From Cyanophora paradoxa CCMP329 (taxonomy: Eukaryota; Plantae; Glaucophyta), in contig QPMI01000496.1 of the NCBI GenBank assembly GCA_004431415.1, positions 558,001-622,000 of the forward strand: a stretch of DNA of 64,000 bases, read 5' to 3'. The position numbers were made by a program, and so were the translations under genes. Below are positions 14,612 to 55,300 of this stretch, one piece after another (position 1 is the first letter of the stretch; every line of letters begins with the position of its first letter). Under the pieces are notes generated by a model. The model was given only the letters and a program-made list of their open reading frames with translations, was not told the DNA's origin and searched no databases.

Positions 14612-17529
14612 CTACTTGCGGTTCTTGGTGGCGATGTGCTCGACGACGGCCGTGATCATCAGCATCAGCAGCGAGTCCACCCCGCTGCGCGCGCGGCGGG
14701 CGCGGCTCGACGTCAGGGGCGCACGCGAAGCGAGCGAGCGAGCGAGCGCGAGGCGGGCGAGATTATGGAGGGGGCGCACGGGGCGCATTCCAGGACGTAG
14801 GTCTGGTTCCGGGGGGAAAGGTACCGGTATAAGTCAGCTCAAGAACGAGAGCGGCGCGGCGCGGCAGGAGAGCTAGAGCCCTCATTCGGGCGCAAGCGCA
14901 CGTTGGTGCCGAGGAAGGTCTTGAAGTTCAGGTTCTCGATGATGCGCGCCACCACCTGCTTCGTCTTCACGTTCTCGATCTGCGCCGGGGGAGGAGGAGG
15001 AGGAGGCGGGGCGACCTCAGGCCGGGCCCGGGGCGATCGCGACGAGCGGCTTCGGGCGCTCACTGACTCGCCCGGCGGCCCTTCAAGTTCTAGGTTATAT
15101 TCCAATAAAGCTCTAGAGGCTTTTAAGCTTTCTAGGTCCAAAGCCTGCGAATCGAGTATGCGCAGGCCGGACCTTGAAGTCCATGTCGAGGGTGCCCTTG
15201 ACCTTGTAGAGGTACTCGTTCTGCTGCGGGTCCTCCGGCTCCCCGTTCAACTCTGCCCCCTCGGCTCAGAGAGAGGGCGGCCGGAGGAGCGGGAGCTTAA
15301 GATCTAGAGAGCTGGCAGCTCTAGATCTGCCGCTGGGCCGCCGGGCCGGGCAGCGCGCGCACTGAACTGGGTGTTGCCGCGGTAGATGCGGTTCGTCGAC
15401 TTCCTGCCCGGTCCAGGTCGGGCCGAGGGGGGGGGGAAGGGGGGGGGTACCAGGGGAGGGAGAAGACGTCCTCGCGCATCGTCGCCACGACGTTCTCCTT
15501 CCCGTCGTAGATCTGCCCCGTACCCCCGAACTCGAATCCGAAAGCTGCACGGGCAGCGGGGTGGGGTGGGACGGGGCGGGGGTACCTTGTAGACGGTGCC
15601 GATGGAGAAGACGCGGTCCTTGATCTTGCACACCGGCGTCCCCTGCGAGAGCGCGGGTCGGGGCCGGTCGATCCGAGGCGGCCGGGGTGGGGGGGGGGGG
15701 GGGGGGGGGGAGGGGATGGGAGGGCGAGGGAGCGGAGAAGGGTGGGTGGGGCCGGGGAGGGGGGCCGGGGAGGGGGGAATGGGGGGGAATGGGGGAATGG
15801 GGGGGGGATGGCCTGTGCGGTGGCAAGTGCGCCGGTGGGGGAGGGGGGCGGAGCGGGGCACCGCGAGCGGTGAGCTCGAGGGTCTCTTGAGCCGCTCTAG
15901 ATCTGGGGAGGCGCGGCCGCGGGGCGCGGGGCGCGAGCCTCGGAGGAAGGGCGCTAGGGTCGGGCCGGGCTCGTGGGGGCGCGAGGCTCGGGGCTCGGGG
16001 CCCGGGGCGGCGCACGTTCATGTCGGTGTAGCACGTGTCGTCCTTCGAATTCGGAGGGGGGGGGGGGGGTCAGCCGGGGGCCGGGGGAGAATCGAGGGGG
16101 TGCTGGGAACGCCGGCGGGGCCCGCTCACGTTGAAGGACCAGAACTTGCCCTTGCCTGAGGGGTTCCGGATTAGAATCCCGGACATGACTTAGTTACAGA
16201 TATAATAAAGCCACCACTTATGATTTAAAGGGACAGCTTCCTAAACAAACGAAAACGGCGGCGTACCCTTGAGGACCTTGCGGCCGTACGCGTCGTAGAT
16301 CGCCTGATCGCCTGTACCCCGGCGCCCCCGCGTCAGGCGGACTCCGGGAAAAGGATGGGCATCGGATATCGATGTCGAGGCGAGCGGGGGTCGGAGGCGG
16401 ATTCGAACCGTCGGTGAGCTGCCCTGCGCCGCGGCGGAGCGGCACAACGCGCGCTTCGAGGGGCTCACCCTCGTCGCCTCCCGCCCCATCGCCCGGGGAG
16501 AAGGTCCCACCCGCCCCCCGCCCCGCACCCGCCGCCCCCTCATCGCCCCGCTCACGTTGAAGGACCAGAACTTGCCCTTGCCTGAGGGGTTCCGGATTAG
16601 AATCCCGGACATGACTTAGTTACAGATATAATAAAGCCACCACTTATGATTTAAAGGGACAGCTTCCTAAACAAACGAAAACGGCGGCGTACCCTTGAGG
16701 ACCTTGCGGCCGTACGCGTCGTAGATCGCCTGATCGCCTGTACCCCGGCGCCCCCGCGTCAGGCGGACTCCGGGAAAAGGATGGGCATCGGATATCGATG
16801 TCGAGGCGAGCGGGGGTCGGAGGCGGATTCGAACCGTCGGTGAGCTGCCCTGCGCCGCGGCGGATTAGAAAGAACGGGCCGAGTTCAGCATCTAGCCTGA
16901 CTCGAATAAATTCTGAGAGAACTGAAGGGCGCACAGAACTTGTCCTTCAGCGTCCAGCGGAACGGGTAGTTGAACACCTGCGCCGCAGGGCCCGGGCGCG
17001 CGTCAAGACGCTAGAGATCGAGGGCGCCACCGAGTCGGCGAGTCGGCCGGGCCGGGTCCCGGCTCAGCGGCAGAAGCTTAAGTTCTTGTATAGATAAACT
17101 CGATTCATAAAAATCGATGGAGACCGAGGAGCGAGGAGTGAAGGGGCGCGCGCGGGGGCCGGGCGGGCGCGCGGACCCAGTTCGCGCCGATGACGGGGCC
17201 GTCGCTCACGGGCTGGAGCACGCCGGGGACCTGCGGACGAGGCCGGCGCCATCAGGCCTCGAAGCGCGCGCGAACGGGCGCCGGACGCCGACGGAAGACG
17301 CGGCGGCGGCGGCGCACGGCGCGGCGGTCCGGCCGCGCCGCGCCGGCGCCGCGGCGCCCAACGGAAGGAAAGGGCGCACAATCATGTCCGTGGGCGGCGG
17401 CAGGTACGCCGGGGCCGGAGAGCCGCCGTACGCCTGCTGCGGCGGATAGCCCTGCTGCGGCGGATAGCCCTGCTGCTGCGGATAGCCCTGCTGCGGTGGA
17501 TAGCCCTGCTGATAGCCGTAGCCCGACAT
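14612..17529 (-). CDS. LURP-one-related / Tubby-C-like (scramblase-like) protein with N-terminal GYPPQQ repeats
   Basis: Spliced exons: MSGYGYQQ(GYPPQQ)n...|FRWTLKDKF|WQLTD|GDQAIYDAYGRKVLK|GKGKFWSFN|DDTCYTDMN|GTPVCKIKDRVFSIGTVYK|IYDGKENVVATMRE...YKVKGTLDMDFK|IENVKTKQVVARI...|TYVLECAP|GVDSLLMLMITAVVEHI, a beta-barrel pattern ending in a hydrophobic C-terminal helix. Confidence 0.75.
16121..16864. repeat. Direct repeat of ~318 bp (16121-16438 and 16547-16864) duplicating three small exons, separated by 108 bp of unrelated sequence
   Basis: The two copies appear identical at an offset of 426 bp. Confidence 0.92.
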
Positions 17530-31967: not shown

Positions 31968-34900
31968 ATGTCGGCTAATGGGAATCCGGCTGCGCACCCG
32001 CCAGCCGCAGCCTCAGCTCCACCCGCTGCAGCTGGCCGGCCGCGCCTGCAAATGCAGATGACATCAGCGGTGTGGAACGCGGCCGTGGCGCCAGAGGCGG
32101 CGGCGGACGGCGCGGCGGCGCCCCCGCTGCTGGCGGATGACGTGCAGGTCGACGTGCTGCGGGTGCGAGCCGGCCCGCCGCGCCCGACGCGCCGATTGCG
32201 ATGCGCGAGTTCGAACGCGTACGTAACGGGCCGGGGCGCGCGTGTCTGCGCAGGGCGAGTCGAAGGTCCCGTCGGCGGCGCCGAAGTTTGCTTTCAGCTC
32301 AACAGCCGCAGCGAGTGCCGTTCAGTTCCACGGGCCCGCCCCCTCAGTGCGCGCTTCCTCGCAGTTGCAAACCATGTGCGCTCTTTTGAATTTGAAGTCT
32401 GACAAGTGTGCGGCCTGCAGACCGGCGCCGGCCCTTCGAAACCGGGGAAGAAGCGGGTGCGAGACTACTCCGCGGCGCCGCTTCCCGACCCGCGGCCGGA
32501 GGCCTCCATCCGCTACTACGACGCGTGCGCCCGAGCCCGAGCCCGATCGCGACTTTTCGGCATTGACGCTCTCTGTTTCGCTCGTGCAGAGCCCTGAGCT
32601 TTGCGCGGGGTGTTTGCGTCGCCGCGGCCTCGTCCCTCGCGACGGCCCTCGAGCGGCACGGGTTAAAGGTACCCTGCCCCCGGCCTTCCCCCCCCTCCCC
32701 GACCACCCCCCCCCCTTACCCCCCTTCCCCCCTTCCCTCCCTCCCCCTCCTCCCTCCCCCGCCTTCCCGCCCCCTCCTCCCTCCTTCCCCCCCCCCCCCC
32801 CCCCCACCCCCCATCTCCCACCCCTGTCTCACCCTCTCGGCCTCCATGATCATGTGCACTCGCGTGCAGTGCTGGTACGATGACGACGTCGCGGAAATGA
32901 ACGGCGAGATCAAGAACCTCGCGAGGCGCGCCGCTTCGATTCTATATCTAAGCAGCTGCGGCTGCGTCTCGAGCCGATTTTCGCCGCAGGCGCAAGGAGA
33001 TCGCGGCGGCGATCGAGGGCTGCGAGTGCCTTGTCGTCATTGCCACGCCGGGTACCCCTTCGCCCCCCAGTCCCGGCCCCCTCCCCCCCCCTGCCCCCCT
33101 CCACCTCACACACGTGCACGCACAATCCCAGCCCCCCGGGCTTCCCCCCCCCCCCCCCCCCCGCTTTCCACCCCTCTCCCTCCCCTTACGCCCGGCCCTT
33201 CCCCCCCCCCCCCCACGCCCCCCCCCTCTCCCCCCCTTCTCCCCACCCAGCCCTAGCCTCATGATCAACCCCAGCCCTACCTCGCCTCTCCCACTCCCCG
33301 CCCCCGTATCCCCAAACCCCTTGCTTGCTCTGCCGGGGCAGCTGATTCAGCTGATGCCACTTGTTTCGTGTCCGTACATGTACAGAGTGGTTCCACTCGC
33401 CGTGCGCCTCTATATATTCGAAATAGGACGCCGTTTGAGCTCTGGGGCTGAGCTCGCGACGGCGCCGCAGGGCGTGCCTGACGGAGCTGGAGCACGCCGC
33501 GTGGCTCGGCAAGCGCCTGCTCTCCTTCTCGCCGGGCGGCCAGACCCTCCACGCCCTCGGCGCCTCTATCTCCGCAGCATCCACGGTGAGCTGCAGCTCT
33601 GGCTTTCCCCGGACCGCAAACGCTTCTTAGCCAACGACTCGGCGACTAAATATTCGAGTTCGGCAGGCGGACCCCGCGCGCGTTGCCTCCGCTGTCAGCG
33701 TCCTTAGCCGTGTCGACGAAATCCATGCACAGGACCAGAAAGGTGATTATCTTCTCTTGAGTTCAGAATCACTACAGTCTACAGTCTACAGCTAGATCAT
33801 CGGATCGAAATATGATCTCGCAAGCAGGAGCCGGGTACGCGAAGGCTGTTCAGGACCTCGCCACCAAGATTCGGGTACCCCGTCTCACGCGCCGACGTCC
33901 CCCTCCCCCTGAGGCCTCACGCCGGGGCCTCCGCGCGCAGCCCCAGGGCACGTCCGTCGTGGAGCCTGGTCCGCAATCCTTCGGACCCGCCCTGGCGCTT
34001 AAGCTTCCCCTTAGCGTTCGAACCCTGCCCGGCCCCGCCCGCTTTGCAGACGCGCAGACGCCGATCAAGGCGCTCGACGTGATGGTCTCGTACAGGTGCG
34101 GGGACGGGCAGGGCCGGCGCAGCCCCCGCCGGCCGCCTATTACGCTGAATATTCTAACAAACACGATTTGCGCTCCCCGCGTGCGCAGACGGGTGCAGAC
34201 GGCGGAGATGGAGGTGGTCACAAGGATCCTGAAGGACCGTGGCCTCACGGTGCGTATACGTCTGCCCACGAGCTCCGGATTCTTTTGGCCTGCTCGACGC
34301 TTAGAGTATTTGGCCGCAGTACTGGGTCGACGTGTCGACGGAGAACGGCATTCTGAAGGGCGTTCAGTGGTGCGCCCCGGCCCAGCCGAAATTTCCCACT
34401 ACTTCGTTGTTTGTCGATTTCACTCAGCCCTGCTGCGTTCGCAGGGGCAAGGCCATAGCAGCCGGTAACTTTTAATAGCATACTCCAATGATTTATTTAA
34501 ATAGAGCAAGTCTCCCGTCGCAACTATTGCTTGCCCCGACACGCGCCCCCCGCGCGCAGCGATCAAGGGTGCTTCAACGATGGTGGTCCTGCTGACACCG
34601 GGTAAAACGAGCCAGCTTCTAGATTATGTTATTCGACTCTTATTAGAGCCCGCTTGCTCCTGCAGACTGGATCCAATCGCAGTACTGGTCAGTACCATGA
34701 GCCGCGGGCTGCTTCGATTAATTCCTCATCAATATATAATCGCGCCACAGCCGCTCTAGCTTGACCTCTGACTCCGCGCAGCATCGACGAGTTCGAGTAC
34801 GCGTGCGCGCAGCACAAGCGCGTGGTCGTCGTCGAGCTGGCGCCCGTCCCGCCCCTCGCCGACGATCTCGACGACGACGCCACCGAGTCCCAGCGCGGCT

Positions 34901-37900
34901 TCCTCCGGTGCGGCCCGGCCTCAGCTGCAACACCCTAGGCCTCGACTGCGATAAGATTTGCATATTTGGGGATTCCCTCACGATCGCCGCTCGCGCACGC
35001 GTGCAGGCGCCAGAAGATGTGCATGGAGGCCATCAACTCGTGGTGCGCGGCCACGCGCTCGACACTTGTCAATTGCAATTGCAAGGGTCGGGCCAAGCTG
35101 ACGAGGGCGCGCGCGTGCACGCAGGCAGAAGATCCCGTTCCCGGCCCTCTTCAAGCAGAGCCCGGAGGCACTCCCGAAGCTCTCCGCCGACCCCGCCTTC
35201 GTCAAGTCCTGCGACGACATGGAGGCCGCCATCCGGGTCCGCATTAATAATTAGACCCGATGCTTGCTTCTGGCTTGCTTGTTTACAACATTCATAAGGC
35301 CTCTCATGCGCCAAGCACTTGACGCTTGAATAAGCTCAGCAAAAACATAAAATCGCGCGCTTCTCGTTTCATTATTTAAGCAAGCGTTTACGTAGAGCTT
35401 TCTCTCGCCACTAATATGTTATTCTAATATTCTCTGTCCCTCCAGTTCGACGCAGAGGCGGCCCGGCTGCACACGCAGCTCACGCTGCGCGCCGACAAGT
35501 ACAAGGAAGGCGCGTGGAGCTGCTGCGGGCTATCGTACCGCTTGGCGGCCCCCTCAGGCTTCTAACCTTGCGATATTAATCCTGCAGCGCTGGGATTCGA
35601 CGCGGGGACGAAGTGGGTGGACACGCGGGATGTGCACCTGAAGGGCGTCCCAAAGGAGAACCGCACCAAGGCCGAGGCCGTGCTCCTCGTCCGTTTAATT
35701 AATTTCGAGCTTGATTTGCTTTCGTTCGTTCTGTTATAATGAAGCTGAGTGATTTCTGTATCTAGCACGGTTTCGCGCTCGAGGAGGCGTTTGATTGGCT
35801 GAAAAAGGCGGAACCCGAGACGGCGAAGAGGACCAACTACACGGTGAGCACTCCGCATTTATCGCCGCGTACATTGTTCGAGATATTAATTCGCGGTGAT
35901 CAATATAATCTTTTTAATTAGGTGGCGGACATGTTCCACATCCCGACCTCCATGTCTCGCCTCTGGCCGTGGCGATCGAAGCGGGACATCGCCGACTCGG
36001 CCCGTCAAAGCACAGGCAAAGGCGACACACCGTTCCTCAAGCCCACCCCCGAACAGGTTTGGTTTGACAAATCTGACAAGCAAAAGCATTCGCGTGCTCA
36101 CCTATCAGCGGCCGCGGCTCGTCGGCGTCGGCAGGTCGTGCTCATCCGCCACAGCCTGAAGCACGAGGTTCGCAAGAAGCGGACGATTGCGATCATCGCC
36201 GCCGTCATCGCGTCCGGTGAGTAATCGCTTCGTTTCAAATATAATTCAGGCGATCAGCTAACGTGCATGCCGGCGCAGCGCTCCTCGCGGCCGCCATTGT
36301 GTCCATCGTATTCGCGAGTGCGATCGATATCCTTGTTGCTGAACTCCCCGCCGTCGAGGCCCGTCTACGTATATTGACGATCGCGGCGGCGCAGTCAGCG
36401 CCGCGCAGCAGAAAGCGGAGGCGGAGACGCAGTCGCGGCGCGCCTCGGAGGAGGCGAAGCGCGCCACCGAGGCCGCGCAGCGCGCCCTGGAGCAGGAGGC
36501 GCTGGCGACCCTCAACGCCGCCCGCGCCCTCAACGCCTCCATCCTCGCCGAGCAGAGGGCCAACGAGGCGCTGGCCAACCTGCAGCGGGCCACGGCGGCA
36601 GAGGCGGAGGCCAGGAACCAGAGCGCCATCGCGAGGGCGAACGAGCTGCTGGCGCTCGCCGCGCAGAACGAGACCGCCCTGGCGCTCCTCGCCGCGCAGA
36701 AAGCGCAGAACGAAACCGCAAAGGCGCTCCTCGCGACCCAAGCCGCGCAAAGCGAGACCGCAAAGGCGCTCGTGGCGGCGCAAGTTGCGCAGAACGAGAC
36801 GGCGAAGGCGCTCGTGGCGACGCAGGCGGCCCTGGCCGAGGCGCAGGACCGACAGGCGATCTCCGCGGCGCTCTCCAACAGCGGCTCGGACCCGGAGGCC
36901 GCCCTGCTCTTCGCGATGGAGGCGCTCGCGTCGGCGGTCACGCGCACGAACGCGGCGCTGACGACCGCCGCCGAGTCGACGCTCCGCTCCGTGCTCGAGT
37001 CGGGCGCGAGCGGCTACCTCTGGACGGGCGGCTCGACCCCCGCTCGGCGCCGGGAGCGCCGGGCGCGCTCCCTGCTCGAGGTGGATAGCTACTCCACCAT
37101 CGCCGACTTCGCCACGGGAAGTTCTTTCTACGACTTTCAGGTTCGAATTCTCGAAATGGAACCCTGCGCATTAATGTTTCACGCCATGTCTATCGTTCTA
37201 AATTGCATGCGCAATTTCCGTCAGACGTTCACTGCGACGTCTCCGCGCGGGACACTTACGATCTATGCCGGGGTCGGCGTTGTCGCTCCGACCGCAACCA
37301 GCACCGACGTCAACAGCCCCACTCAGACTTTCCAGGTATACGCAGACTTGATCATCGAATCATGGCATTATAATTACCACCCGAGGTTTCAGCTGAAGCT
37401 GATTTCTTCCATACATAAACATAGATGCACCTGCTGGGCCAAGTCTACGACGACTCGAACAAGTTGGTTTACACGATCCGGGACGCCCTCGTCGGCTCCG
37501 CCAACAAGTCCAGCTACTGGGCCTTCTCGCTCGGCTCCATCCGCTTCTTCGTCGACGACTACGGCGACGTCGTGGTGCGTAGGCATATAAACAATGATAG
37601 GACTTGCTGGCTGTAATTTCGACTTACTTCCCATTAATTTTCCAATGTGCACTTCCTTCGTCCTTGAATAGATGCACGTGAAGCGACTTGGGCCCGAGAC
37701 GCCTGTCTGCACTGACCTTCCGAAGGACACGGAGGGCATCGGGTGCGCATTCTTTTTATATATAGCTATATATCTATAGAATATATATAAAAGAATGCCT
37801 CTCGCATCTCGCCCATTGCCTCTCGGCAGCTGCCTACCACGCACAACCTCGACGGTTTTCATCTACAGCGGGAGGCGCCCGGACGAGCGCGGGTGCCTGA

Positions 37901-40900
37901 AAAAGGACGGAATGATCGCGAGCGACGCCAGCTTCCTGCTCGAAACGCATGACGTCTTCGTCGGTACGTGACTTCAGCGCGATCGCGAAGCCGTCAACGC
38001 AGGGAATAGATTTTCTGACAGCCTTCACTCAGCGTCGAACGTCGTCGCGTTCTTCACGGGAGAGACAAAGGGGGCCACACCGTGGAGAGGCGTAGAGGAT
38101 ATATTCAAGAACACGAATACGGCAAAGGGGGAAGCGAGGCCCCGCAACGTCATGCGCATCCACCGCGGACAGCTGTCGTTTGCAGATGCCCCTGCTCCGT
38201 TGTACCAAGGTCAGTGCTTGCTTTATACGCCTGCGTGCAATCTCGTTAATCGCAAGTGCCTGCTTGGCGCACAGGGTACCTCCCGAACACGCCCGAGCTA
38301 TGCCATTTTATAATTACTGCTGAATCGTGGATCACGATTGAGCTTCCTGAGAGCCCCCTTCGCGGCTTGGAAAACCCGGCGGCTCTGGCAGAGGAAAAAA
38401 CGTGGCGGACGAAAATGGCGTACGGCTATCCGTTCGCGAACCCGGTCGCAGTTGCACAGCGCACGTGCAGCCGCGGCAGCGAAAAGTACCTCGCGGCGGC
38501 GGTCGCTACCGGCAAGTCCTTCTCATCCGATACGACGGCAGCAGGAGGAACAGTTGAATCGTACAACGCCGACACCAGTCGAACGTTGAAGGTCATTCTC
38601 ATACCAATGGCGACGCTGACAGACGCAAGTAAAACAGCTGCCGACGTGTTTAGCTCCATGCAGCTAAAGGAGAGCACCGGCCTCGCGCCTGTGGGCGGCG
38701 ACTTTGCCTCCGATTCACTGGAAACACCTGCAGTACCAGATTTCATCCATAATCTTGGAAAGTTCTCGTTCATGGTCGGCATCACCGACCTCGACGTGTC
38801 CGACAATTGTTCCTGGATCGCTGGGATCCTGCAGGTCCACGGACCGGGCTCGGTCGAAACTACCTACTCGCTTTTCGGCTACGGTAGCACGGCAGTGGCG
38901 TACCATCTCGTCAGGTGCGGATGCAGAACTGCTGTAAAGCAAACTAGCGACGACATCGCCCTCCCTTCCACGTTTGCTCGCATGCATTCGGAGATTCACA
39001 TGCCCCATCGATACCCTCAGAGCGCAGCTAACATGGGCGGGCGGCTCCCTCACAAAGAGCTCCGTGTGGATGTACGTCAGCCCGATCCACAACTCGTTGC
39101 GGAACTTCGCTTCGCTCACATGCTGGGACGTCACTCAATTCAATCTGTGGCGGCTTAAGAATAATCTTATCGGTACTGGGGCCCTTGCGTGTTTACGAGA
39201 CGGACCAACCCCGACTTCCTGAACGAGGATGCCAACAACGTAAAGGCCGCGGATCCGGATCTCATCCTCGTCGGCATTGTAAAGGACGATCCGGACGCCA
39301 ATACACTAGGCGCAGGCCAGCCGGCGGGCGGATACGGCGCGCTCCTTCTTCGCAAGGCGGGTCACAAGACCTCTGGCCTTTGCGTCCGCCAGCAGCTGGT
39401 GTTCATGCCGTTCTCAACCAGCCTCCCTTCTTTGTACCGGTGCGGTTGCACCCGCGGCCGCCGTTTCGTGCAATGTGCTTGCGATTGCAATATTAATTGC
39501 AATCATTGGGCTCTTCGAACTAAACAGCAAAATCGCCGAGTTGGATTGCGGGCAGAGTACACTGGCTCACCGAATGACCTTCGCCGGAAAGCCATGTCGG
39601 TGCGCGCCCGAATGACCTTCGCCACGGGCTCGGCGCCCACATTTAGTGTATATATATTGGCTTTAGCGCTGATCGCTAGCTTCGCGCAGGTCTCTGTTAT
39701 CGACGGGGGACCGTTCATTACGGTGGGCGGCTCTGCTGGAGGCATCGAGTTCTACGATTTGCGGACCCCGCAAGACCTCTTGACGACCAAGACCGTGCGA
39801 ATTGAATTGAGATGTTCGATCTGCTAAGCCATGGCCAGACAGTGCTCATGGTCACCTCTGGGCAGGCTGAGGTTGTGTCGCTGTCGGGAAGAGTGCGCAC
39901 AATCAAGTACACGCCGCTCGCTCCCGGAACCGGGTACCGGTCGACCCTCGTTGCCGCCGACGACGCGGGCAACTTCGCGCGACTGGAGCTGAAGAGCACA
40001 ACCTCTACGACTCCTATTCGGAAGAAGGTGATTCAATGATTATCTTTAGCTTCTTCTAAGCTTCTTATCTTAAGCTTGAATGCTTATGTAATCAAGCACA
40101 GGGCCCCAATGTTCTCGACGCCGAGGTCGCCGACAACACATTGGATCCGGAAAGCTCGACACGGTCTTGGATTGCCAAACTGGGCGCTTCTTTCGCCAAC
40201 GTGGACAACCTGGGGCCGAACCGCGCACTTTTCCTCAAAAGCCCTACGATGTGCCATCTCTTTGTGACTGGGCAGAAGCGCGCCATGTACTGGGACGTGG
40301 ATGTTGCCGGCGGCGCTCTTGCGTCCATGACGCAACTCACGCAGCTGATCAAGCCGTTCGAACTTAAAGCACTTCAGCATTCCCTGGGAATTGATGGATC
40401 TCGAAAGTGGGTAGTTCTTTGATTCATGATCATTGTTCATGTGCGATGACGAGCTGACACCAACTGGCTCTAGGTCAACGACTTTGGACGGGCAAATGTG
40501 TGATGATTGCAACGATGACACCAAAAACTATCGCTGTGAGTCGTGCTCGTGCATGTTCTCGTTAAAATCAATAGAACCTGATAGATGAATTTAGGATTAT
40601 AATACGTATTCTGTATAATTATAATGTATATTCTGATGCGCGCATACGCAGTCTTCGGAGTGCACCAGCCAACGGGCAACCTAATGGCTTTAAGTGCGAC
40701 GGGAGGGACACTCTACACGGGCGACGGTCGCTGCGCAGAAAACCAGGCGTCGCGCATAGCCCCATCAAAAACATGGTGCCAACTGCTTCTGTCTTTTAGA
40801 TCAGAGTATAATAGCGCTAGCAGAGATGCATTGCGCTTACGTCACGCTCGAAATCAAATTGCAGGAGTTGGATGGCGAAACCGGAGGCTTTACCTTGGAC

Positions 40901-43900
40901 TGCGACTCGGAACACGGTGGACGCAAACGCCCCGAAGGTCATCTTCTCCGATGCCTTCGCGCCGTTCATGGGCGCGGCGGCGGAGCCCCCGACGGCCGGC
41001 TTCAACTCCGTTATACAGTCTATCACCAACAACCCGGAAGAAGCCTACTCTGTCGCCGTCTCCTCTGGCCCCGTCCACGGGGACAGCAACGACCTCAGCC
41101 TCCCGTCCCAGTACTTCCCGAGTGCGCAAGAGAACGCCGAGCCGCTGGCGTTCCACGAGTCCAGCTGGGCCGCCATGGCCGGCGTGCTCTACCCGCTCGA
41201 CCAGGTGCGCAGGCTCCAAGCGAGTGCTTTGAATGTGAACGTGCTTTGTCGTTGATTTTTTCTAAATCGCAATTGCAAATGCAGGGCGTTCCAGTCGCGA
41301 GCTCCGCGGTCTCCGTGTTCGAGATGAATCCCGCGCTTCGAAGCGCGTTCGTGCCGAAGCACAAGGACCACCCGGACGTCTGGGCCGACTTCCTGAACCC
41401 GGATGACACTTTCAAGGCTCCGCCGACCCTCAGCGCCTACACGGCGCGCTACCCCTATGTTCACCTGACCGGTGCGCTGGCAGCACGTGCACGATGCATA
41501 TTTATCATACTCCAGTATGATATGAAGCTTAAGAGTGTTGCGCATGCAGACGTCCAGCACGCGGCGGGATTTTCTGGCGACGGGCTAAACTGCGCCTTCT
41601 GCTTCTCTTATGTGAGCCACGCGCGCTTTCAAATTTGAAGTCGTCGTCGCGCAATTTGATTGCGATTGAACTCGAAAATGCGCGCCTCGCAGTTCTATTA
41701 CGCGGCACAGGGTGCTGGTCAAGTGGCTTGGGATCAATACGTCTACCAGAACAGCGATGAACAGTGTCCGCTCTCTCCTACCTTAACGTGCTTGTTTCAG
41801 CAGGAGAGGAGCTACAGCGCCGCGGAGCGCGTCGTCGTGATGCTGGCCTCTCGCCCATCCGCCACTGTGCGCTCTGCACACTTGTCTGTAGATTCGGGAG
41901 TCGGAGCTGTGAACCTAAGCCTCGCGCGCAGTCCTCGGTGTGGACGTCGGCGGGGGCGGCTTTCCTGCCCACTTGGAGCGGCCCGAAGCAGCGCGCTTGC
42001 CGCAGGGTCCTCTTCTGGGGCTCCATCGCCGTCCTGGACATGCGCGCCGCCTCCTCGCCGCAAGTGCCTGCTTGGCGCACAGGGTACCTCCCGAACACGC
42101 CCGAGCTATGCCATTTTATAATTACTGCTGAATCGTGGATCACGATTGAGCTTCCTGAGAGCCCCCTTCGCGGCTTGGAAAACCCGGCGGCTCTGGCAGA
42201 GGAAAAAACGTGGCGGACGAAAATGGCGTACGGCTATCCGTTCGCGAACCCGGTCGCAGTTGCACAGCGCACGTGCAGCCGCGGCAGCGAAAAGTACCTC
42301 GCGGCGGCGGTCGCTACCGGCAAGTCCTTCTCATCCGATACGACGGCAGCAGGAGGAACAGTTGAATCGTACAACGCCGACACCAGTCGAACGTTGAAGG
42401 TCATTCTCATACCAATGGCGACGCTGACAGACGCAAGTAAAACAGCTGCCGACGTGTTTAGCTCCATGCAGCTAAAGGAGAGCACCGGCCTCGCGCCTGT
42501 GGCGGCGACTTTGCCTCCGATTCACTGGAAACACCTGCAGTACCAGATTTCATCCATAATCTTGGAAAGTTCTCGTTCATGGTCGGCATCACCGACCTCG
42601 ACGTGTCCGACAATTGTTCCTGGATCGCTGGGATCCTGCAGGTCCACGGACCGGGCTCGGTCGAAACTACCTACTCGCTTTTCGGCTACGGTAGCACGGC
42701 AGTGGCGTACCATCTCGTCAGGTGCGGATGCAGAACTGCTGTAAAGCAAACTAGCGACGACATCGCCCTCCCTTCCACGTTTGCTCGCATGCATTCGGAG
42801 ATTCACATGCCCCATCGATACCCTCAGAGCGCAGCTAACATGGGCGGGCGGCTCCCTCACAAAGAGCTCCGTGTGGATGTACGTCAGCCCGATCCACAAC
42901 TCGTTGCGGAACTTCGCTTCGCTCACATGCTGGGACGTCACTCAATTCAATCTGTGGCGGCTTAAGAATAATCTTATCGGTACTGGGGGCCCTTGCGTGT
43001 TTACGAGACGGACCAACCCCGACTTCCTGAACGAGGATGCCAACAACGTAAAGGCCGCGGATCCGGATCTCATCCTCGTCGGCATTGTAAAGGACGATCC
43101 GGACGCCAATACACTAGGCGCAGGCCAGCCGGCGGGCGGATACGGCGCGCTCCTTCTTCGCAAGGCGGGTCACAAGACCTCTGGCCTTTGCGTCCGCCAG
43201 CAGCTGGTGTTCATGCCGTTCTCAACCAGCCTCCCTTCTTTGTACCGGTGCGGTTGCACCCGCGGCCGCCGTTTCGTGCAATGTGCTTGCGATTGCAATA
43301 TTAATTGCAATCATTGGGCTCTTCGAACTAAACAGCAAAATCGCCGAGTTGGATTGCGGGGCAGAGTACACTGGCTCACCGAATGACCTTCGCCGGAAAG
43401 CCATGTCGGTGCGCGCCCGAATGACCTTCGCCACGGGCTCGGCGCCCACATTTAGTGTATATATATTGGCTTTAGCGCTGATCGCTAGCTTCGCGCAGGT
43501 CTCTGTTATCGACGGGGGACCGTTCATTACGGTGGGCGGCTCTGCTGGAGGCATCGAGTTCTACGATTTGCGGACCCCGCAAGACCTCTTGACGACCAAG
43601 ACCGTGCGAATTGAATTGAGATGTTCGATCTGCTAAGCCATGGCCAGACAGTGCTCATGGTCACCTCTGGGCAGGCTGAGGTTGTGTCGCTGTCGGGAAG
43701 AGTGCGCACAATCAAGTACACGCCGCTCGCTCCCGGAACCGGGTACCGGTCGACCCTCGTTGCCGCCGACGACGCGGGCAACTTCGCGCGACTGGAGCTG
43801 AAGAGCACAACCTCTACGACTCCTATTCGGAAGAAGGTGATTCAATGATTATCTTTAGCTTCTTCTAAGCTTCTTATCTTAAGCTTGAATGCTTATGTAA

Positions 43901-46900
43901 TCAAGCACAGGGCCCCAATGTTCTCGACGCCGAGGTCGCCGACAACACATTGGATCCGGAAAGCTCGACACGGTCTTGGATTGCCAAACTGGGCGCTTCT
44001 TTCGCCAACGTGGACAACCTGGGGCCGAACCGCGCACTTTTCCTCAAAAGCCCTACGATGTGCCATCTCTTTGTGACTGGGCAGAAGCGCGCCATGTACT
44101 GGGACGTGGATGTTGCCGGCGGCGCTCTTGCGTCCATGACGCAACTCACGCAGCTGATCAAGCCGTTCGAACTTAAAGCACTTCAGCATTCCCTGGGAAT
44201 TGATGGATCTCGAAAGTGGGTAGTTCTTTGATTCATGATCATTGTTCATGTGCGATGACGAGCTGACACCAACTGGCTCTAGGTCAACGACTTTGGACGG
44301 GCAAATGTGTGATGATTGCAACGATGACACCAAAAACTATCGCTGTGAGTCGTGCTCGTGCATGTTCTCGTTAAAATCAATAGAACCTGATAGATGAATT
44401 TAGGATTATAATACGTATTCTGTATAATTATAATGTATATTCTGATGCGCGCATACGCAGTCTTCGGAGTGCACCAGCCAACGGGCAACCTAATGGCTTT
44501 AAGTGCGACGGGAGGGACACTCTACACGGGCGACGGTCGCTGCGCAGAAAACCAGGCGTCGCGCATAGCCCCATCAAAAACATGGTGCCAACTGCTTCTG
44601 TCTTTTAGATCAGAGTATAATAGCGCTAGCAGAGATGCATTGCGCTTACGTCACGCTCGAAATCAAATTGCAGGAGTTGGATGGCGAAACCGGAGGCTTT
44701 ACCTTGGACTGCGACTCGGAACACGGTGGACGCAAACGCCCCGAAGGTCATCTTCTCCGATGCCTTCGCGCCGTTCATGGGCGCGGCGGCGGAGCCCCCG
44801 ACGGCCGGCTTCAACTCCGTTATACAGTCTATCACCAACAACCCGGAAGAAGCCTACTCTGTCGCCGTCTCCTCTGGCCCCGTCCACGGGACAGCAACGA
44901 CCTCAGCCTCCCGTCCCAGTACTTCCCGAGTGCGCAAGAGAACGCCGAGCCGCTGGCGTTCCACGAGTCCAGCTGGGCCGCCATGGCCGGCGTGCTCTAC
45001 CCGCTCGACCAGGTGCGCAGGCTCCAAGCGAGTGCTTTGAATGTGAACGTGCTTTGTCGTTGATTTTTTCTAAATCGCAATTGCAAATGCAGGGCGTTCC
45101 AGTCGCGAGCTCCGCGGTCTCCGTGTTCGAGATGAATCCCGCGCTTCGAAGCGCGTTCGTGCCGAAGCACAAGGACCACCCGGACGTCTGGGCCGACTTC
45201 CTGAACCCGGATGACACTTTCAAGGCTCCGCCGACCCTCAGCGCCTACACGGCGCGCTACCCCTATGTTCACCTGACCGGTGCGCTGGCAGCACGTGCAC
45301 GATGCATATTTATCATACTCCAGTATGATATGAAGCTTAAGAGTGTTGCGCATGCAGACGTCCAGCACGCGGCGGGATTTTCTGGCGACGGGCTAAACTG
45401 CGCCTTCTGCTTCTCTTATGTGAGCCACGCGCGCTTTCAAATTTGAAGTCGTCGTCGCGCAATTTGATTGCGATTGAACTCGAAAATGCGCGCCTCGCAG
45501 TTCTATTACGCGGCACAGGGTGCTGGTCAAGTGGCTTGGGATCAATACGTCTACCAGAACAGCGATGAACAGTGTCCGCTCTCTCCTACCTTAACGTGCT
45601 TGTTTCAGCAGGAGAGGAGCTACAGCGCCGCGGAGCGCGTCGTCGTGATGCTGGCCTCTCGCCCATCCGCCACTGTGCGCTCTGCACACTTGTCTGTAGA
45701 TTCGGGAGTCGGAGCTGTGAACCTAAGCCTCGCGCGCAGTCCTCGGTGTGGACGTCGGCGGGGGCGGCTTTCCTGCCCACTTGGAGCGGCCCGAAGCAGC
45801 GCGCTTGCCGCAGGGTCCTCTTCTGGGGCTCCATCGCCGTCCTGGACATGCGCGCCGCCGTCCTCGCCGTCCCCGTCGTCAACGGCGCGCTCGACACCGG
45901 CCGGAGCGTGCAGGTCGAGCAGAGGACGCGCGCCGCCCCGCCCGACGCCACGTTGCCCGACCCTCCCTGCGACGCGGAAGGCCTCCACAGCGACCCGGGC
46001 ACCGGTACCGGTACGAAGAGGCGGCGAAGGACCGCGGCCGAGACCGCCGCGACGCGAGCCTGCACCAAGTACCGCGAGGCGAAGAACCGAATCACGAAGA
46101 ACCAGCGGAGCGGTCCCGGCTTCCCGGACGCCTCGGTGTACGTCTCGACGGCCTCCGTCCTCTGGCTCGTCGACGCGACGGGCGCGCGGGCCTACAAGAC
46201 ATTCGAGGCGCTGTCCGGCCGCCCCCAGAGCCCGGACATCCTCATCGAGTTCTCGAAGTACCCGCCCCGCGCCTCGCGCAACGGTGCGGCCCCTTTAATT
46301 TCCCGCACCCCGTTGCCGTGCCATTTGAATTCATGATCATTGATCATGAGTTTTCGGGCTGGCTAACGTTTTCCATTGCAGGCCGCTTCGTCGCGGTGTG
46401 GAAAACCGCAACGTTCTTGCAGGTCCGCGCGCTGAATTTAATTTCTTCAAGAGGCCTCGCGGCCGAATTCGCGCCGCAGTGCAAGCGGCAGACTCTAGAT
46501 CTTGAGAGCTTGCCCGACTGAACGGCCCTTCATTCCCGCAGATCTACGACCTGGAGCTGGGCGCCGAGGCCGCGGACTACGCGCGGCCCGTCCCCGTCGA
46601 CGCCTCCTTCGTCAACCCACTCTCGGCCCTCCCCGCCTACGTCTCCGTCTCCGACGACGGGTGCGCATAACAATTTGAACTTAATCCGAGCGTCCTAGCG
46701 TTGGCGCTGACTCGCTGCGCCTCTGCCGCAGGGCGTACCTCGCCATCCGCCACCTGACCGCCGACTCCAAGTTCGGCCTCCGCGTGATGGACGTCTCCCG
46801 CGAGGCGCTGCTCCGCGCCAGCTGCGGCGTCGTCAGCCGCGGCTTCGACGCCGACGAGCTGACCGGCGTCTACGGCTCCTCGTTCAACCGCACCACCCGC

Positions 46901-47512
46901 GTCGCGACGACCGCGTGCTCGAGCTCGGGAACCAGCGGCACCCCCGCTACGCAGCGCGTCCGGCGGCCCGCGGGCGCCGTCGCCAGACGGGCCCCCCCCA
47001 GCAAGCCGGTCGTGGTGGCCGGCTCGTGGAAGGGATCCGAGCTGCGCGTCTTCGTCCACAACCGCCGCAGCGGCGACGCGATCGCGACGGAGGCGAACGT
47101 CACCTGCGTGCCCGACGCGGCGGCCGCGGCCGCGGGGGCGAAGGTCCTGTCGGGCGCGGCGCCCATGAACTTCAGCATCCAGCCGCGCGTGAACTCCCGC
47201 ATCGCCGCGCCCGGCCAGTCCCTGGACGACTGGGACGCCAACCTGTACTACATGTCCCGCTCCGTCCCCCCGCACATCGTTGCCGAGTTCCTGTTCACGG
47301 ACGCGGCGCCCGACACGGCGTACACGTGCACGGCGACCGTGAGGAGCGGCGCCGGCTTCGGCGACGCGGCCGCCGTGACGGCCAGGACGCAGGCGGCGGC
47401 GTACGCGGGCCCCCCGGCCCCCCGGCCGTCCAGCATCTCCAAGAATTCGTACTGCCAATCCGCCGTCCAGTCCAACGCGGCCGCGGCCGCAAAATGCCCG
47501 GTAGTCGTTTAA
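31968..47512 (+). CDS. TIR-TIR-transmembrane-coiled-coil-beta-propeller-like giant protein (predicted type II membrane receptor) with C-terminal FN3-like segment
   Basis: TIR1 ~32515-33520 (YYDA|ALSFAR...GLK|CWYD...EIAAAIEGCECLVVIATP|EWFHSP|ACLTELEHAAWLGKRLL). TIR2 ~34070-34850 (LDVMVSYR|R...GLT|YWVD...AIKGASTMVVLLTP|DWIQSQYC|IDEFEYACAQHKRVVVV). Linker RLHTQLTLRA...LL|HGFALEEAFDWL...PTPEQ|VVLIRHS, then RKKR and a hydrophobic helix TIAIIAAVIAS|ALLAAAIVSIVFA (~36180-36320), an Ala-rich coiled coil and DPEAALLFAMEA. WD/propeller-like strands follow (FITVGGSAGGIEFYDL; VSVSDDG|AYLA), then FTDAAPDTAYTCTATVRSGAGFG and a stop at 47512. Confidence 0.8.
36661..36828 (+). repeat. Four tandem 42-bp coding repeats (AQNETAKALxAxQx; two heptads each)
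   Basis: gcgcagaacgagaccgcc... unit repeated four times at 42-bp spacing; three units carry an N-E-T sequon. Confidence 0.85.
38253..45869. repeat. Near-perfect tandem duplication of ~3.81 kb (38253-42060 and 42061-45869) inside the TIR-TIR gene
   Basis: Offset ~3808 bp. The only differences seen are single-G indels (near 38692/42501, 39178/42985, 39550/43358, 41079/44888 and beside the junction at ~42051/45860). Confidence 0.95.
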
Positions 47513-48349
47513 TTTAAGATACTATAGCTAGAATTCGAACTTGACTCAGCGAGATCGATCATCGTCGTCCCATATGCATAAATTCAAAGCGTGTCACGTA
47601 ATCGTAGTATAATTATATAATGCGTAAAAGTAATTATAATTGTAGAAGATTCTGAGCCCCTGTGATCATGAGTAACAGTTCTTGATCATGATCATGCATA
47701 TGAGCTCTAGGTGTTGTACGTGTACATGTAGAAATAGCTCTTAACTTCCTTTTGACGTAGAACGTATACGTAGTCGACGCCCATATTCGAATTCATATTC
47801 ACATTAATACTCATATTGAACTACGTGTCGCACTCGACCCCTTGAAAAACCTACTAACTATATAGAGTGAACAAGTACTAGTGTACGCTGTTCTCGTCGC
47901 CTTCTAGTCAGTTCTGTAGACTCTGAATTATTTACTAGTCGACAGGTGTAAACTCAGTGATACTCTAAGAAAAATTTCAACCTTCAACTATCGAAAAAGA
48001 AATCACTAACAAAGAACAGCGCAGTAATCGTACAACATGCTCATGGGAAGTACGAGGACTAACGACTAATGATTATACACCGTGGCACTGTGACACGACT
48101 AATGATTCGATGATAGATCGCATGATCATGATCCAGCCTATTAGATTCGATTTCCGCATGAGAAAGATGTGTTCGAAAACCGCGAGAAGGATATTACTAC
48201 CTACGGGGGGCTCGGCCCACCGTAGTCTCTCCTAAAAAAGATATTCTCTGCGACAGAGATTGGGACGAAAGATCTCACATGAGAGAAAGGATGTTCGACG
48301 CCCCCCCATGACAGAGACTAAAAGACTCGCTCGGTTGAAACACGACAGC

Positions 48350-51164
<2,815 letters not shown>

Positions 51165-52399: not shown

Positions 52400-55300
52400 T
52401 CAGTGCCGCCCCCCCCGCCGCCCCCCAGATCTGCCGGCGTCCCGCTCGGCGCCGGACCCGTGGCCCGACGCCGACCCCGCCGGCGACTCGTGGCGGGGCG
52501 CATGCCCCGAGCCGTGGCCCGAGCCCCCCGCTCCCGACGACATGTGCTCGTGCCCCGCAGCCGGCTTCGACGCAGCGTTGCTGTGCCTGCTGCCGTGGCG
52601 GTCCAGACCCGCGCCAGCGCTCCGTTCCTTGCCGCTGCTGTGCTTGCTGTCGAGCCGGTGCATGCTGCCGTGCCTGCTGTCGTGCTGGTCCGACTCGCCG
52701 CCCTTCTCCTTGTTGCTGTGCTTGCTGTCGAGCCGGTGCATGACCCTGCTGCCGTGCCTGCTGTCGTGCCGGTCTGACTCCCCACCCTTCTCCTTGTTGC
52801 TGTGCTTGCTGTCGAGCCGGTGCATGACCCTGCTGCCGTGCCTGCTGTCGTGCTGGTCCGACTCGCCGCCCTTCTCCTTGTTGCTGTGCTTGCTGTCGAG
52901 CCGGTGCATCACCTTGCGGCTGCCGTGGCGCTCGAGGTCACCGCCCCTCTCGTTCGAGCTGTGGCGGCTCTCGTGCCTGCTCTCCTGTCGCACGCTGCCG
53001 TGCCGCGAGAGCCCCGCCTTGATCTTCTCCTTCTCCTTCTCGGCCGCCTCTTCCTGGAGCCTCAGCTGCTCCGCCCGCCGCGCCGCGACCGCCCGCGGGC
53101 CCTCCTCGCCCGCCACCACCGCCGCCGGGAGGCCCGCCACGATCGCCCAGATGGGCGCGTACCCCGCCCCGTCTCCGTCGCCCCCGGCGTCGCCGTCCGC
53201 CGGCGCGACGCGGGCCGCCAGCCGCGCCGCGAAGCCCCTCGCGTCCTCCTCCTCCTCCGCGGAGACCAGGGGTACCACCGTGTCCGGGTCCGGGATGGGT
53301 ACTGGGGCCGCGCCCGCCGTACTCGTACCCGGGTCCCGGGAGGGGGCGCGGCCCGTGCGGCCCCCGCCCTCGTCCCAGAAGACGGCGGCGGGCTGCCCCT
53401 CGGGCATCCCCCGCTCCGGCCGCATCTTCATCACGTGCAGGAAGGCCCGCACACGCACCACCCGCGCCCGCTGCGCCGCTCCGGTGAGACGAGAAGGGGG
53501 GGGGGGGGGGGGGGGGGGGGAGGAAAGAGGGTGCGGGTACCATGGCGTGGCCCCAGAGGAAGGACTGCACGACGGACGCGGCGACGGCGCGGTGCAGGAG
53601 CCCCGTACCCTCCCGCCGCGCCTCCCCCTCCCGCCCCGCCGCGCATCTGCCGGAGCGTGAGCGAAGGGAACGAGGGCGCCTCAGGGGGGGGGAAGGGGAA
53701 GGGGGGTACCGCTCGAGGTACGAGTCCCGCAGGGCGCGGGCGGCCGCGTGGTGCTCCCTCAGCCCCGCGTGCCGCCGCGTCGCGAGGCGCTCGAGCTGTT
53801 CGACGTACCCCCAGACCGCCGCGGTCAGCGCGAGGGCAAGGGGCCCGCGAACGAAAAGAGGCGCGCCTGGCGTCGGATGTGCGGAGGGAGCTCTACCCCC
53901 CGCGTCCGGTACACCTGCGGAAGCGCGGGGTTGAGAGCCGATCACGCGGGGGTACGCGGATCCGGCGGGGTTACGGGGCGCACGCGGCGGACGAGCGCGT
54001 TCAGCACGTCGGCGTAGTGGACGCGCGCGTTCGCCACGGGTACGCCCTGCGTCCGGGGGGTACCGCTTCAGCACCCAGGTGGAAGGGGGCTACGGCGTTT
54101 TCGGACACCTTGAGCTCTCGGCAGAGCTCGATGGCGGTGGGGAGGCGGTCCGGCGGGGGCCGGGCGCCCTTCCTCCGCCGCTCGGGGCGTGACGTCATCC
54201 CCAGCGAGGCCAGCAGGCGCCGTACCCCCCATCCCGCCTGCGCCCCCGCCGCTCAGGAGAAGTGTCGGGGGGCGGGGAGTCGAGGGGGTACACGCGCCGA
54301 GATGAACCCGGTGGCGCGGGGGTCCAGCCGCTCCCACGCCGCAGCGAAGCGCTGCAGCTCCGCCTCCTGCGGCGAATCGTTTGTATCCCTCCTCGACTCC
54401 TTCCCCCTAAAAAAAATTTAAATCCGCGTACCCGTATGAGGTACTCGTCGCGGGCGGCGATGCGCTCGAAAGAATCTCTCACGACGGCGACGAAGAGGTT
54501 GTTCCCTGGGAGGGGGGGGGAGGAGGGGGGGAAGAAGGGAGGGGGGTACGGGCTCGCTTCGGCGCCGGATGGGGGGGGGGGGGAACGGAGGGGACGGAGG
54601 GCGCCGCACCCAGGAAGTAGGTTAAGAAGAAGAAGGAGACGAAGAAGACGGGCGCCGCCACGAACGTCCCGCAGTCCTGCCGGCCCCCGGCGCTCAGCGG
54701 CGGGGCAGGGCGGGGGGCGGGGGGCGCGGGGCGCTCGCCTCGTAGGGGACGCCGGGCGTGCAGCCGCTCTCGGGCTGCCGCATGTAGTCCCACCTGAAGA
54801 AAGGGAGGGGCGGTGAGAGGAGGAGGAAGGGGGGGGAGGGGGGGGCCGAGGCTGACATGAGGGTGTCCCAGTTCTCGCCCGTGGTCATGCGGAAGAGGGA
54901 GACGAGGGCGCGCGGGAAGCGCTGGAAGTTGATGTCGCTCCGCGCCTGCCGAGTCCGAGTCCGAGGATTCAGAGGGGGCGGCGGCCGGGGCCGAGAGCGG
55001 CGGGGCGCGGAGGGGTGGTCGCACCGTGGTCGCCCCCTCGAGCATCACGTACTGGAACTGCGGGTTGGGGGGGAGGGAGGGGGGAGGGGCGGCCTCAGAG
55101 GGCCGGCGGGCGCGGGAGCCAGGCAGCGAGAGGGGGCGGCGCGCCTGCCAGACGCCGATGATGCCGTAGATGTAGATGACGAGGACGAGCAGGAGCCCGA
55201 TCGAGCCCAGCGCGGGGAGGCACTGGGGTCCCGCCGTGGGGTCAGGCCCTTGAGCCGGGGCGCGGACGGGCGGGAGGGAGGCAGGGGGGCTAGCGAGCTC

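What the first reader, a model, noticed from the sequence alone, without database searches (positions are those of the whole stretch)
31968..47512. 'Inverted Toll-like receptor': tandem catalytic TIRs, one TM helix and a large beta-propeller-like ectodomain on a bacterial scaffold
Seen in sequence: there is no signal peptide. Two N-terminal TIR domains both keep the catalytic Glu (SPACLTE, codon 33484-33486; SQYCIDE, codon 34789-34791). A basic RKKR precedes a single hydrophobic helix, and N-glycosylation sequons cluster just after it (NAS, NQS, 3x NET), followed by a long beta-rich region and an FN3-like end. This predicts type II topology (TIRs in the cytosol, C-terminus outside), the reverse of animal TLRs. 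Established knowledge: TIR domains with this Glu are NAD+-cleaving enzymes activated by oligomerisation (SARM1, plant TNLs, Thoeris ThsB). From recalled family knowledge, the linker HTxLxxRA...LLxGxxLEEAxxWL...PTxxQxxxIxxS-RR-TM...DPxxALLxA resembles bacterial (cyanobacterial/Chloroflexi/actinobacterial) TIR-WD40 proteins. Inference: a bacterially derived, now intron-rich surface receptor that couples ligand binding to TIR clustering through a coiled-coil stalk.
Basis: partly seen in the sequence, partly recalled or inferred. Interest (0 to 1): 0.9.

Follow-up and report, generated by a model that had tools for sequence, protein, structure and literature searches.

The report
Alga's bacterial-type inverted TIR receptor
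The alga Cyanophora paradoxa has a real, transcribed gene for a giant membrane protein, with two immune-type TIR domains inside the cell and a large part outside, built on a little-studied bacterial receptor frame; this copy recently doubled most of its outer part, and no function has been tested.

Summary
The gene is real: 60 exons (31968-47512) give one 3405-aa frame once four one-base slips are allowed. It is Cyanophora paradoxa g15278. The order is TIR, TIR, helical linker, basic patch, one TM helix, sequon-rich stalk, large outer part. Both Glu codons are at the stated positions, but only TIR2 keeps a SARM1-like pocket motif. RNA contigs confirm 15 introns; none spans the TM.

The TIR2-linker-TM part is colinear with a widespread bacterial TIR-TM-WD40/CHASE2 family; the donor is unresolved. 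The propeller fold has only weak support and the FN3 end has none.

A 3.81-kb tandem duplication doubles 924 residues of the outer part; it is real (DNA depth doubles) and transcribed in frame. An RRxL motif, typical of site-1-protease cleavage, sits outside the membrane in all five paralogues.

Most likely this is a type II receptor whose clustering switches on TIR2 NAD+ cleavage (inferred, about 0.5). The scan found this family before on other DNA of this genome (s1-509555, s1-511110, s1-515125, s1-509643). I found no paper on it.

The parts
31968..47512 (+). Whole gene: 60 exons, 3405 aa; Cyanophora paradoxa tig00020904_g15278
31968..32513 (+). Ala/Pro-rich N-terminus, no signal peptide (aa 1-127)
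   Evidence: hydropathy
32514..33874 (+). TIR1 (aa 128-281): Glu207 kept (33484-33486), pocket motif degenerate, no helical linker after it
34070..35448 (+). TIR2 (aa 298-463): Pfam TIR_2, DVMVSYRR and SQYCIDE, Glu374 (34789-34791); the introns from 34370 on are RNA-confirmed
35449..36167 (+). Helical linker shared with bacterial TIR-TM proteins (HTQL..RA, LLHG..LEEA..W, PT.EQ)
36168..36396 (+). Basic patch VRKKRT and the single TM helix (aa 600-629, split by two introns)
   Evidence: no RNA contig here
36397..36855 (+). Ala-rich helical stalk with five N-glycosylation sequons and 42-bp imperfect repeats
36856..37005 (+). DPEAALLFA box (N-terminal cap of the bacterial outer domain)
   Evidence: 8-9 bits in four paralogues, best shuffle 3.8
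37045..37077 (+). RRRERRARSLL, candidate site-1-protease/furin-type cleavage site, kept in 5 of 5 paralogues
37078..38276 (+). First single-copy part of the outer domain (aa 857-1092)
38251..42058 (+). Copy 1 of the 3.81-kb tandem duplication (aa 1093-2016)
42052..42084 (+). Duplication junction: 11 new codons, mostly former intron; a one-base loss keeps the frame; present in DNA and RNA
42059..45869 (+). Copy 2 of the duplication (aa 2028-2951; 924 of 924 residues identical to copy 1)
45860..46918 (+). Last propeller-like blades and a C-terminal cap motif (L..C..V.R.F...E) like that of bacterial WD40 members
   Evidence: weak
47000..47404 (+). Terminal beta-rich domain, 37% identical in P0003; FN3 not supported

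Best explanation
This is one member of an expanded Cyanophora paradoxa family of single-pass type II membrane receptors built on the bacterial TIR-linker-TM-WD40 frame. SHOWN: one gene, spliced and transcribed, with the order TIR1-TIR2-linker-basic patch-TM-stalk-outer domain, and with TIR2-linker-TM colinear with the bacterial family. INFERRED from sequence rules: the TM acts as a signal anchor, so the TIRs face the cytosol and the glycosylated stalk and outer domain face the lumen or exterior. INFERRED, weakly supported: the outer domain is a heavily diverged WD40-type propeller between the bacterial N-cap and C-cap, and it is cut at RRxL during secretion while staying attached. INFERRED from known TIR enzymes: ligand binding or receptor clustering passes through the stalk and the long helix that runs from the linker through the TM, and brings TIR2 domains together to form NAD+-cleaving sites. 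TIR1 is more likely a scaffold or a weak enzyme. In this copy, a very recent 3.81-kb duplication doubled 924 outer residues in frame.
For: ORF, TM and Glu positions. RNA joints; the spliced unit length plus 37 junction letters equals the RNA contig length of 2835. Agreement with the published model and a colinear paralogue. Pfam TIR_2 E=2e-14. Confident TIR-TIR-helical model of the paralogue, pLDDT 86.5, matching RPP1/RUN1/SARM1 TIRs. TIR2 is the best-conserved part (62% versus 36-48% for most other parts). 78 of 80 GTDB loci carry TIR plus linker, most with TM and WD40; CHASE2 fills the outer slot in Nostoc-type relatives and is extracellular (PMC5587647). 6 K/R before versus 3 after the TM; sequon enrichment. 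Propeller hints: hhalign 20-57% versus at most 0.4% for shuffles, Pfam PD40 E=0.006 and propeller families E 0.05-0.3, Atlas WD40 clusters at 0.87-0.91 (weak).
Against: No activity, localisation or ligand data. A retained Glu predicts activity poorly: 4 of 29 unicellular-eukaryote TIRs were active in E. coli. TIR1 is degenerate. No RNA contig bridges TM and stalk. The outer fold could not be predicted; a WD40 repeat profile scores P0129 at only 0.5 bits, and the linker alone scores only about 12 bits. The bacterial family itself has no tested function in the papers I could search. The tree does not nest the algal proteins in a bacterial clade.
Confidence: 0.5

Rival explanations
1. Same receptor and topology, but the TIRs are non-enzymatic scaffolds that recruit other TIR proteins of the alga, as most animal TLR TIRs do.
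For: Low measured activity rate of Glu-bearing protist TIRs; TIR1 degenerate; tandem TIRs suit a scaffold; the window holds another LRR-TIR-like gene and the scan notes many TIR genes in this genome (unchecked).
Against: TIR2 keeps SY-RR, the strand-B Asp, the aromatic residue before Cys and the Glu in all paralogues where the region is modelled. The Glu is also kept in 121 of 131 bacterial TIRs checked. E. coli overexpression misses enzymes that need clustering (inference).
Confidence: 0.25
2. Activation is gated by proteolysis, not ligand binding: the outer domain holds the receptor off, and cutting at RRxL or shedding releases the TIRs to assemble (a damage or secretory-stress sensor).
For: RRxL[LQ] sits at the same place after the DP box in 5 of 5 paralogues versus 5 of 71 bacterial relatives anywhere in the 250 aa after the TM. 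It fits the R-X-aliphatic-Z rule of site-1 protease (PMC8310232). The outer domain tolerated a 924-residue duplication, which suggests loose structural demands.
Against: The site is 120-220 residues from the TM, far for intramembrane release of the ATF6 type (own knowledge). Such sites often serve constitutive maturation. The outer domain is conserved in order along its whole length at 36-38% between paralogues.
Confidence: 0.13
3. The family is functional, but this duplicated allele is a recent, possibly culture-born accident that misfolds, so this locus no longer makes a working receptor.
For: Zero substitutions over 3.8 kb including 12 introns; the breakpoints fall inside an intron and an exon, not at obvious domain borders; 11 foreign residues at the junction; P0003 has one unit.
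Against: The junction is in frame only because of a one-base loss; without it a stop follows within about 30 codons. It is present in two DNA and two RNA runs from three studies, 2019 and 2024. An in-frame junction arises by chance one time in three, so this is weak.
Confidence: 0.12

Closest known systems
Bacterial TIR_2-helical linker-TM-WD40/CHASE2 proteins (Chloroflexota, Cyanobacteria, Actinomycetota, Bacteroidota; e.g. P0009, P0043, P0057). No Pfam family for the linker and no functional study found.
   Same: Order TIR, linker, basic patch, TM, helical stalk, DP box, outer domain, C-cap; about 27-33% identity over TIR-linker-TM; catalytic Glu; tandem TIRs in cyanobacteria.
   Different: Eukaryotic, 59 introns; TIR1 has no linker of its own, whereas bacteria repeat TIR plus linker as a unit; two insertions in the linker; glycosylated stalk and RRxL site; outer domain much larger, with WD40 signatures almost erased; extra terminal domain; internal 924-aa duplication.
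Animal Toll-like and IL-1 receptors (PMC7075850)
   Same: Single TM helix, cytosolic TIR, large extracellular part; probably works by clustering TIRs across a membrane.
   Different: Reverse topology, no signal peptide, no LRR or Ig domain detected, two TIRs; an analogue, not a member.
SARM1, plant TNL and Thoeris ThsB TIR NADases
   Same: TIR fold, catalytic Glu; TIR2 motifs resemble SARM1's FISYRR and FIDV (SARM1 motifs from own knowledge).
   Different: No ARM-SAM, NB-ARC or LRR; membrane-spanning with an outer sensor; activity untested.
nSTAND1-TM-WD40 bacterial conflict-system proteins (nSTAND1 named in PMC8195603)
   Same: Atlas features of the linker-TM-DP region point to nSTAND1 and TIR-WD40 clusters (scores 0.76-0.87, leads only).
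   Different: No NTPase domain between TIR and TM.

Membership tests
Bacterial TIR-linker-TM-WD40 family | N-terminal TIR_2 domain(s) | tested here: met
Bacterial TIR-linker-TM-WD40 family | Helical linker H..L..RA / LL.G..L..A..W / PT..Q directly after TIR | tested here: met
   Colinear, with His, Gly and Trp invariant in 39 of 39 rows; linker-only HMM is weak, about 12 bits
Bacterial TIR-linker-TM-WD40 family | Basic patch then one TM helix | tested here: met
Bacterial TIR-linker-TM-WD40 family | DP..AL box after the stalk | tested here: met
   8-9 bits in four paralogues versus best shuffle 3.8; 3.2 bits in P0003
Bacterial TIR-linker-TM-WD40 family | WD40 beta-propeller with C-terminal cap | tested here: inconclusive
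   hhalign 20-57%; cap 6.1 bits versus 4.6 in P0003, negative in P0129; AlphaFold failed
Bacterial TIR-linker-TM-WD40 family | Each tandem TIR carries its own linker | tested here: not met
   Bacteria: 3 TIRs with 3 linkers; here about 16-30 aa join TIR1 to TIR2
Bacterial TIR-linker-TM-WD40 family | Nested in the family tree with support | tested here: inconclusive
   Long branch; beside the cyanobacterial multi-TIR clade at 33/16 support; no outgroup
Animal TLR / IL-1R | Signal peptide and N-terminal LRR or Ig ectodomain | tested here: not met
Animal TLR / IL-1R | C-terminal cytosolic TIR after the TM | tested here: not met
   TIRs precede the TM
Animal TLR / IL-1R | Signalling through MyD88-type adaptors | not testable with these tools
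   needs experiments
TIR NADases (SARM1, TNL, ThsB) | Catalytic Glu in helix C | tested here: met
   E207 and E374
TIR NADases (SARM1, TNL, ThsB) | Intact pocket motif (S-Y-x-R; aromatic before Cys) | tested here: inconclusive
   Met in TIR2, not met in TIR1
TIR NADases (SARM1, TNL, ThsB) | Measured NAD+ cleavage | not testable with these tools
   needs an assay
STAND/NLR receptors (nSTAND1, NB-ARC) | Central P-loop NTPase | tested here: not met
   No NTPase family in P0129 or P0003
Fibronectin type III | FN3 profile match at the C-terminus | tested here: not met
   a diverged beta-sandwich is not excluded

The most novel reading that the evidence does not exclude
Glaucophytes took over a whole bacterial membrane TIR receptor, possibly from the cyanobacterial plastid ancestor, fitted it to the eukaryotic secretory pathway (glycosylated stalk, protease site), and expanded it into a family of ligand-gated NAD+-cleaving surface receptors. 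Their outer domains diversify by large in-frame duplications, one of which is caught here at zero divergence. This would be a third, independent route to a TIR surface receptor.
Probability: 0.25. Interest if true: 0.88.

Novelty: new variant of a known kind. Interest (0 to 1): 0.64.

Why it matters
Known eukaryotic membrane TIR receptors (TLR, IL-1R) are type I animal proteins, and plant TIR receptors are cytosolic. An N-terminal-TIR, outside-sensing receptor in an early-branching archaeplastid would show that a bacterial receptor frame was reused whole in a eukaryote. It would also give a testable handle on a widespread but unstudied bacterial family. This locus adds transcript support and a freshly doubled outer domain, a natural test of how modular the sensor is. 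Function, ligand and donor remain open.

Tried and rejected
Assembly artefact for the 3.8-kb repeat: suspected from the zero substitutions and G-run indels, rejected because depth doubles (200 vs 92; 137 vs 62) and the junction is in DNA and RNA contigs. Bacterial contaminant contig: rejected (59 spliceosomal introns, RNA joints, EukProt Cyanophora model). Two separate genes: disfavoured (no stop, published model and paralogue agree), though no RNA bridge over the TM. Pfam exon by exon: nothing, the exons are too short. AlphaFold on the outer domain: failed with 3 rows, so no fold search on it. PDB sequence searches with the outer-domain and tail alignments: nothing. FN3 mini-profile: below shuffles. 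Cyanobacterial (plastid) origin: not shown, not rejected. Viral and metagenome scans: no relatives; these scans cannot see intron-rich genes. CaaX prenylation: rejected, Cys is fifth from the end. P0002 and P0004 were chance hits. Paper searches found no description of the family. Database searches used single exons by reference or returned ids (P0003, P0129, P0009).
Full report
Observation. The region is a eukaryotic gene with short introns. I built the exon model by hand from three-frame translations. It has 60 exons from 31968 to 47512, 57 GT-AG and 2 GC-AG introns, and one open frame of 3405 aa. Four one-base slips in G runs must be allowed. At each, the other copy of an internal duplication has the G, and reads show the first. 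There is no hydrophobic N-terminus and only one clear TM helix, aa 606-629, after VRKKRT. Five sequons lie in the stalk; 12 of 10,000 shuffles reach that number, and K/R counts are 6 before and 3 after the helix.

Identity and independent support. An exon search returned two Cyanophora paradoxa proteins. P0003 is a 2350-aa paralogue that aligns in order from TIR1 to the C-terminus: TIR1 43%, TIR2 62%, linker 48%, outer parts 36-38%. P0129 is the published model of this gene (tig00020904_g15278). It agrees with my model over 3062 aa and differs mainly by starting at Met29, skipping the middle of TIR1 and skirting the four slips. P0001, P0007 and P0008 are further paralogues. RNA contigs show 15 of the 59 introns as joints, in TIR1's end, TIR2, the linker and the outer domain. 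No RNA contig covers 35990-37000, so the TIR-to-outer-domain link rests on the open frame, the published model and the paralogue. The RNA label of those runs is a guess by the tool, but the contigs are spliced.

38251-42058 and 42059-45869 are copies with no substitutions. This is not an assembly error. DNA depth doubles at 38251 in two runs (200 vs 92; 137 vs 62), and the junction stands in both DNA and both RNA runs. The spliced unit from my model plus 37 junction letters is 2835 nt, exactly the length of the RNA contig, which also checks the total exon length of the unit. The junction turns 24 bases of intron into coding sequence, and a one-base loss next to it keeps the frame; without that loss a stop follows within about 30 codons. 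The result is 924 identical residues twice. P0003 has one unit, so the duplication is derived and very recent. Whether it was selected cannot be told; an in-frame junction arises by chance one time in three.

The bacterial scaffold. A piece of P0003 found P0009, a bacterial TIR-linker-TM-WD40 protein, and P0009 found a large family. In 80 GTDB loci, 78 have TIR plus linker, most with one TM and WD40 repeats; they come from Chloroflexota, Cyanobacteria, Actinomycetota, Bacteroidota and others. Cyanobacteria carry two to four TIR-linker units, followed by WD40 or CHASE2. CHASE2 is an extracellular sensor (PMC5587647), which supports C-terminus-out topology for the frame. The algal TIR2-linker-TM aligns in order, with the linker's His, Gly and Trp invariant in 39 rows, although the linker alone scores weakly. 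The DP box scores 8-9 bits against 3.8 for the best shuffle, and the C-terminal cap 6.1 against 4.6 in P0003 only. One difference: bacteria repeat TIR with its linker, while TIR1 here has none, so the algal tandem arose separately or lost a linker. Trees put the algal proteins on a long branch. The best tree places them beside the cyanobacterial multi-TIR clade at 33/16 support. Without a root or protist sampling, neither donor nor direction is shown. Bacterial origin is the economical reading because the frame is widespread in bacteria and I found it in no other eukaryote, with limited sensitivity.

TIR domains. AlphaFold on P0003 150-690 with 70 rows gave pLDDT 86.5: two TIR folds, a helical linker and one long helix running through the TM. 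The TIRs match RPP1, RUN1 and SARM1. TIR2 keeps DVMVSYRR and SQYCIDE; TIR1 has DAALSFAR and SPACLTE, without the Tyr-Arg and the aromatic residue before Cys, and similarly in the paralogues. The Glu is necessary for activity but a poor predictor: 4 of 29 unicellular-eukaryote TIRs with it were active in E. coli (bioRxiv 10.64898/2026.04.20.719644).

Outer domain. AlphaFold failed (pLDDT 28, three rows). Profile comparison with the bacterial WD40 part gave 20-57% probability in five of ten segments against at most 0.4% for shuffles. Pfam gave PD40 at E=0.006 and propeller families at E 0.05-0.3. The Atlas gave WD40 clusters, flagged as weak. A diverged propeller is plausible, not shown. FN3 is unsupported. 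After the DP box all five paralogues have RRxL[LQ]; only 5 of 71 bacterial relatives have such a motif in the 250 residues after the TM. It fits the site-1-protease rule (PMC8310232) and points to processing in the secretory pathway.

Mechanism. Most likely (0.5) a type II receptor whose ligand-driven clustering assembles TIR2 into an NAD+-cleaving complex, with TIR1 as a scaffold. Architecture and homology are shown. Topology is inferred from sequence rules. Processing, ligand and catalysis are inferred by analogy. The rivals are a non-enzymatic TIR scaffold (0.25), protease-gated activation (0.13) and a non-functional duplicated allele (0.12).

Novelty. It is not a TLR, since two defining features fail. 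It works like one by analogy and is a eukaryotic variant of an uncharacterised bacterial family. I found no paper on the family (most subscription journals are not searched). The scan noted the same family on other DNA of this genome; those are unchecked AI notes and not counted as support. I saw no mention there of the expressed in-frame duplication or the RRxL site. Verdict: new variant of a known kind, interest 0.64.

Noticed in passing
window 3287-4210 (-): Piece of an LRR gene (Pfam LRR_8 E=2e-8) followed by a TIR-like start (YDAFISHR); another TIR gene about 28 kb away.
   Followed up: partly
window 16121-16438 and 16547-16864: A 318-bp direct repeat, 100% identical, 108 bp apart; possibly another very recent local duplication.
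   Followed up: no
window about 31108 downward (-): A head-to-head gene starts about 860 bp upstream with a signal-peptide-like N-terminus followed by Arg-rich motifs.
   Followed up: no
window 48318-49349 (-): Convergent neighbour: Pro/Thr-rich stretch, a Cys-containing beta domain and a probable TM; no Pfam match.
   Followed up: partly
window 32870-33470, 39181, 39549, 42500, 44890: The published model g15278 skips the middle of TIR1 and invents introns around four one-base assembly slips, so databases show one TIR and a shorter protein.
   Followed up: yes
window 32926-32989 and 35510-35587: Two GC-AG introns are needed for the frame; neither is covered by an RNA joint.
   Followed up: partly
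P0018, P0057, P0063; loci L030, L036, L062: Cyanobacterial proteins with three or four TIR-linker units, a TM and a CHASE2 sensor: a bacterial membrane receptor with several TIRs that I found no study of.
   Followed up: partly
L001 7836-10361: The gene after the bacterial TIR-TM-WD40 gene has a faint SH3_3 hit, and P0066 of the same family carries SH3_3, hinting at cell-wall binding.
   Followed up: no
window 52579-52917: Imperfect 84-87-bp tandem repeats in a His/Ser/Arg-rich reading frame on the minus strand.
   Followed up: no
window 32680-32830 and 33060-33300: Long C-rich tracts fill introns 4 and 6 of the gene; I started the read-laying at 33301 and so have no reads on the first half of TIR1.
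   Followed up: no
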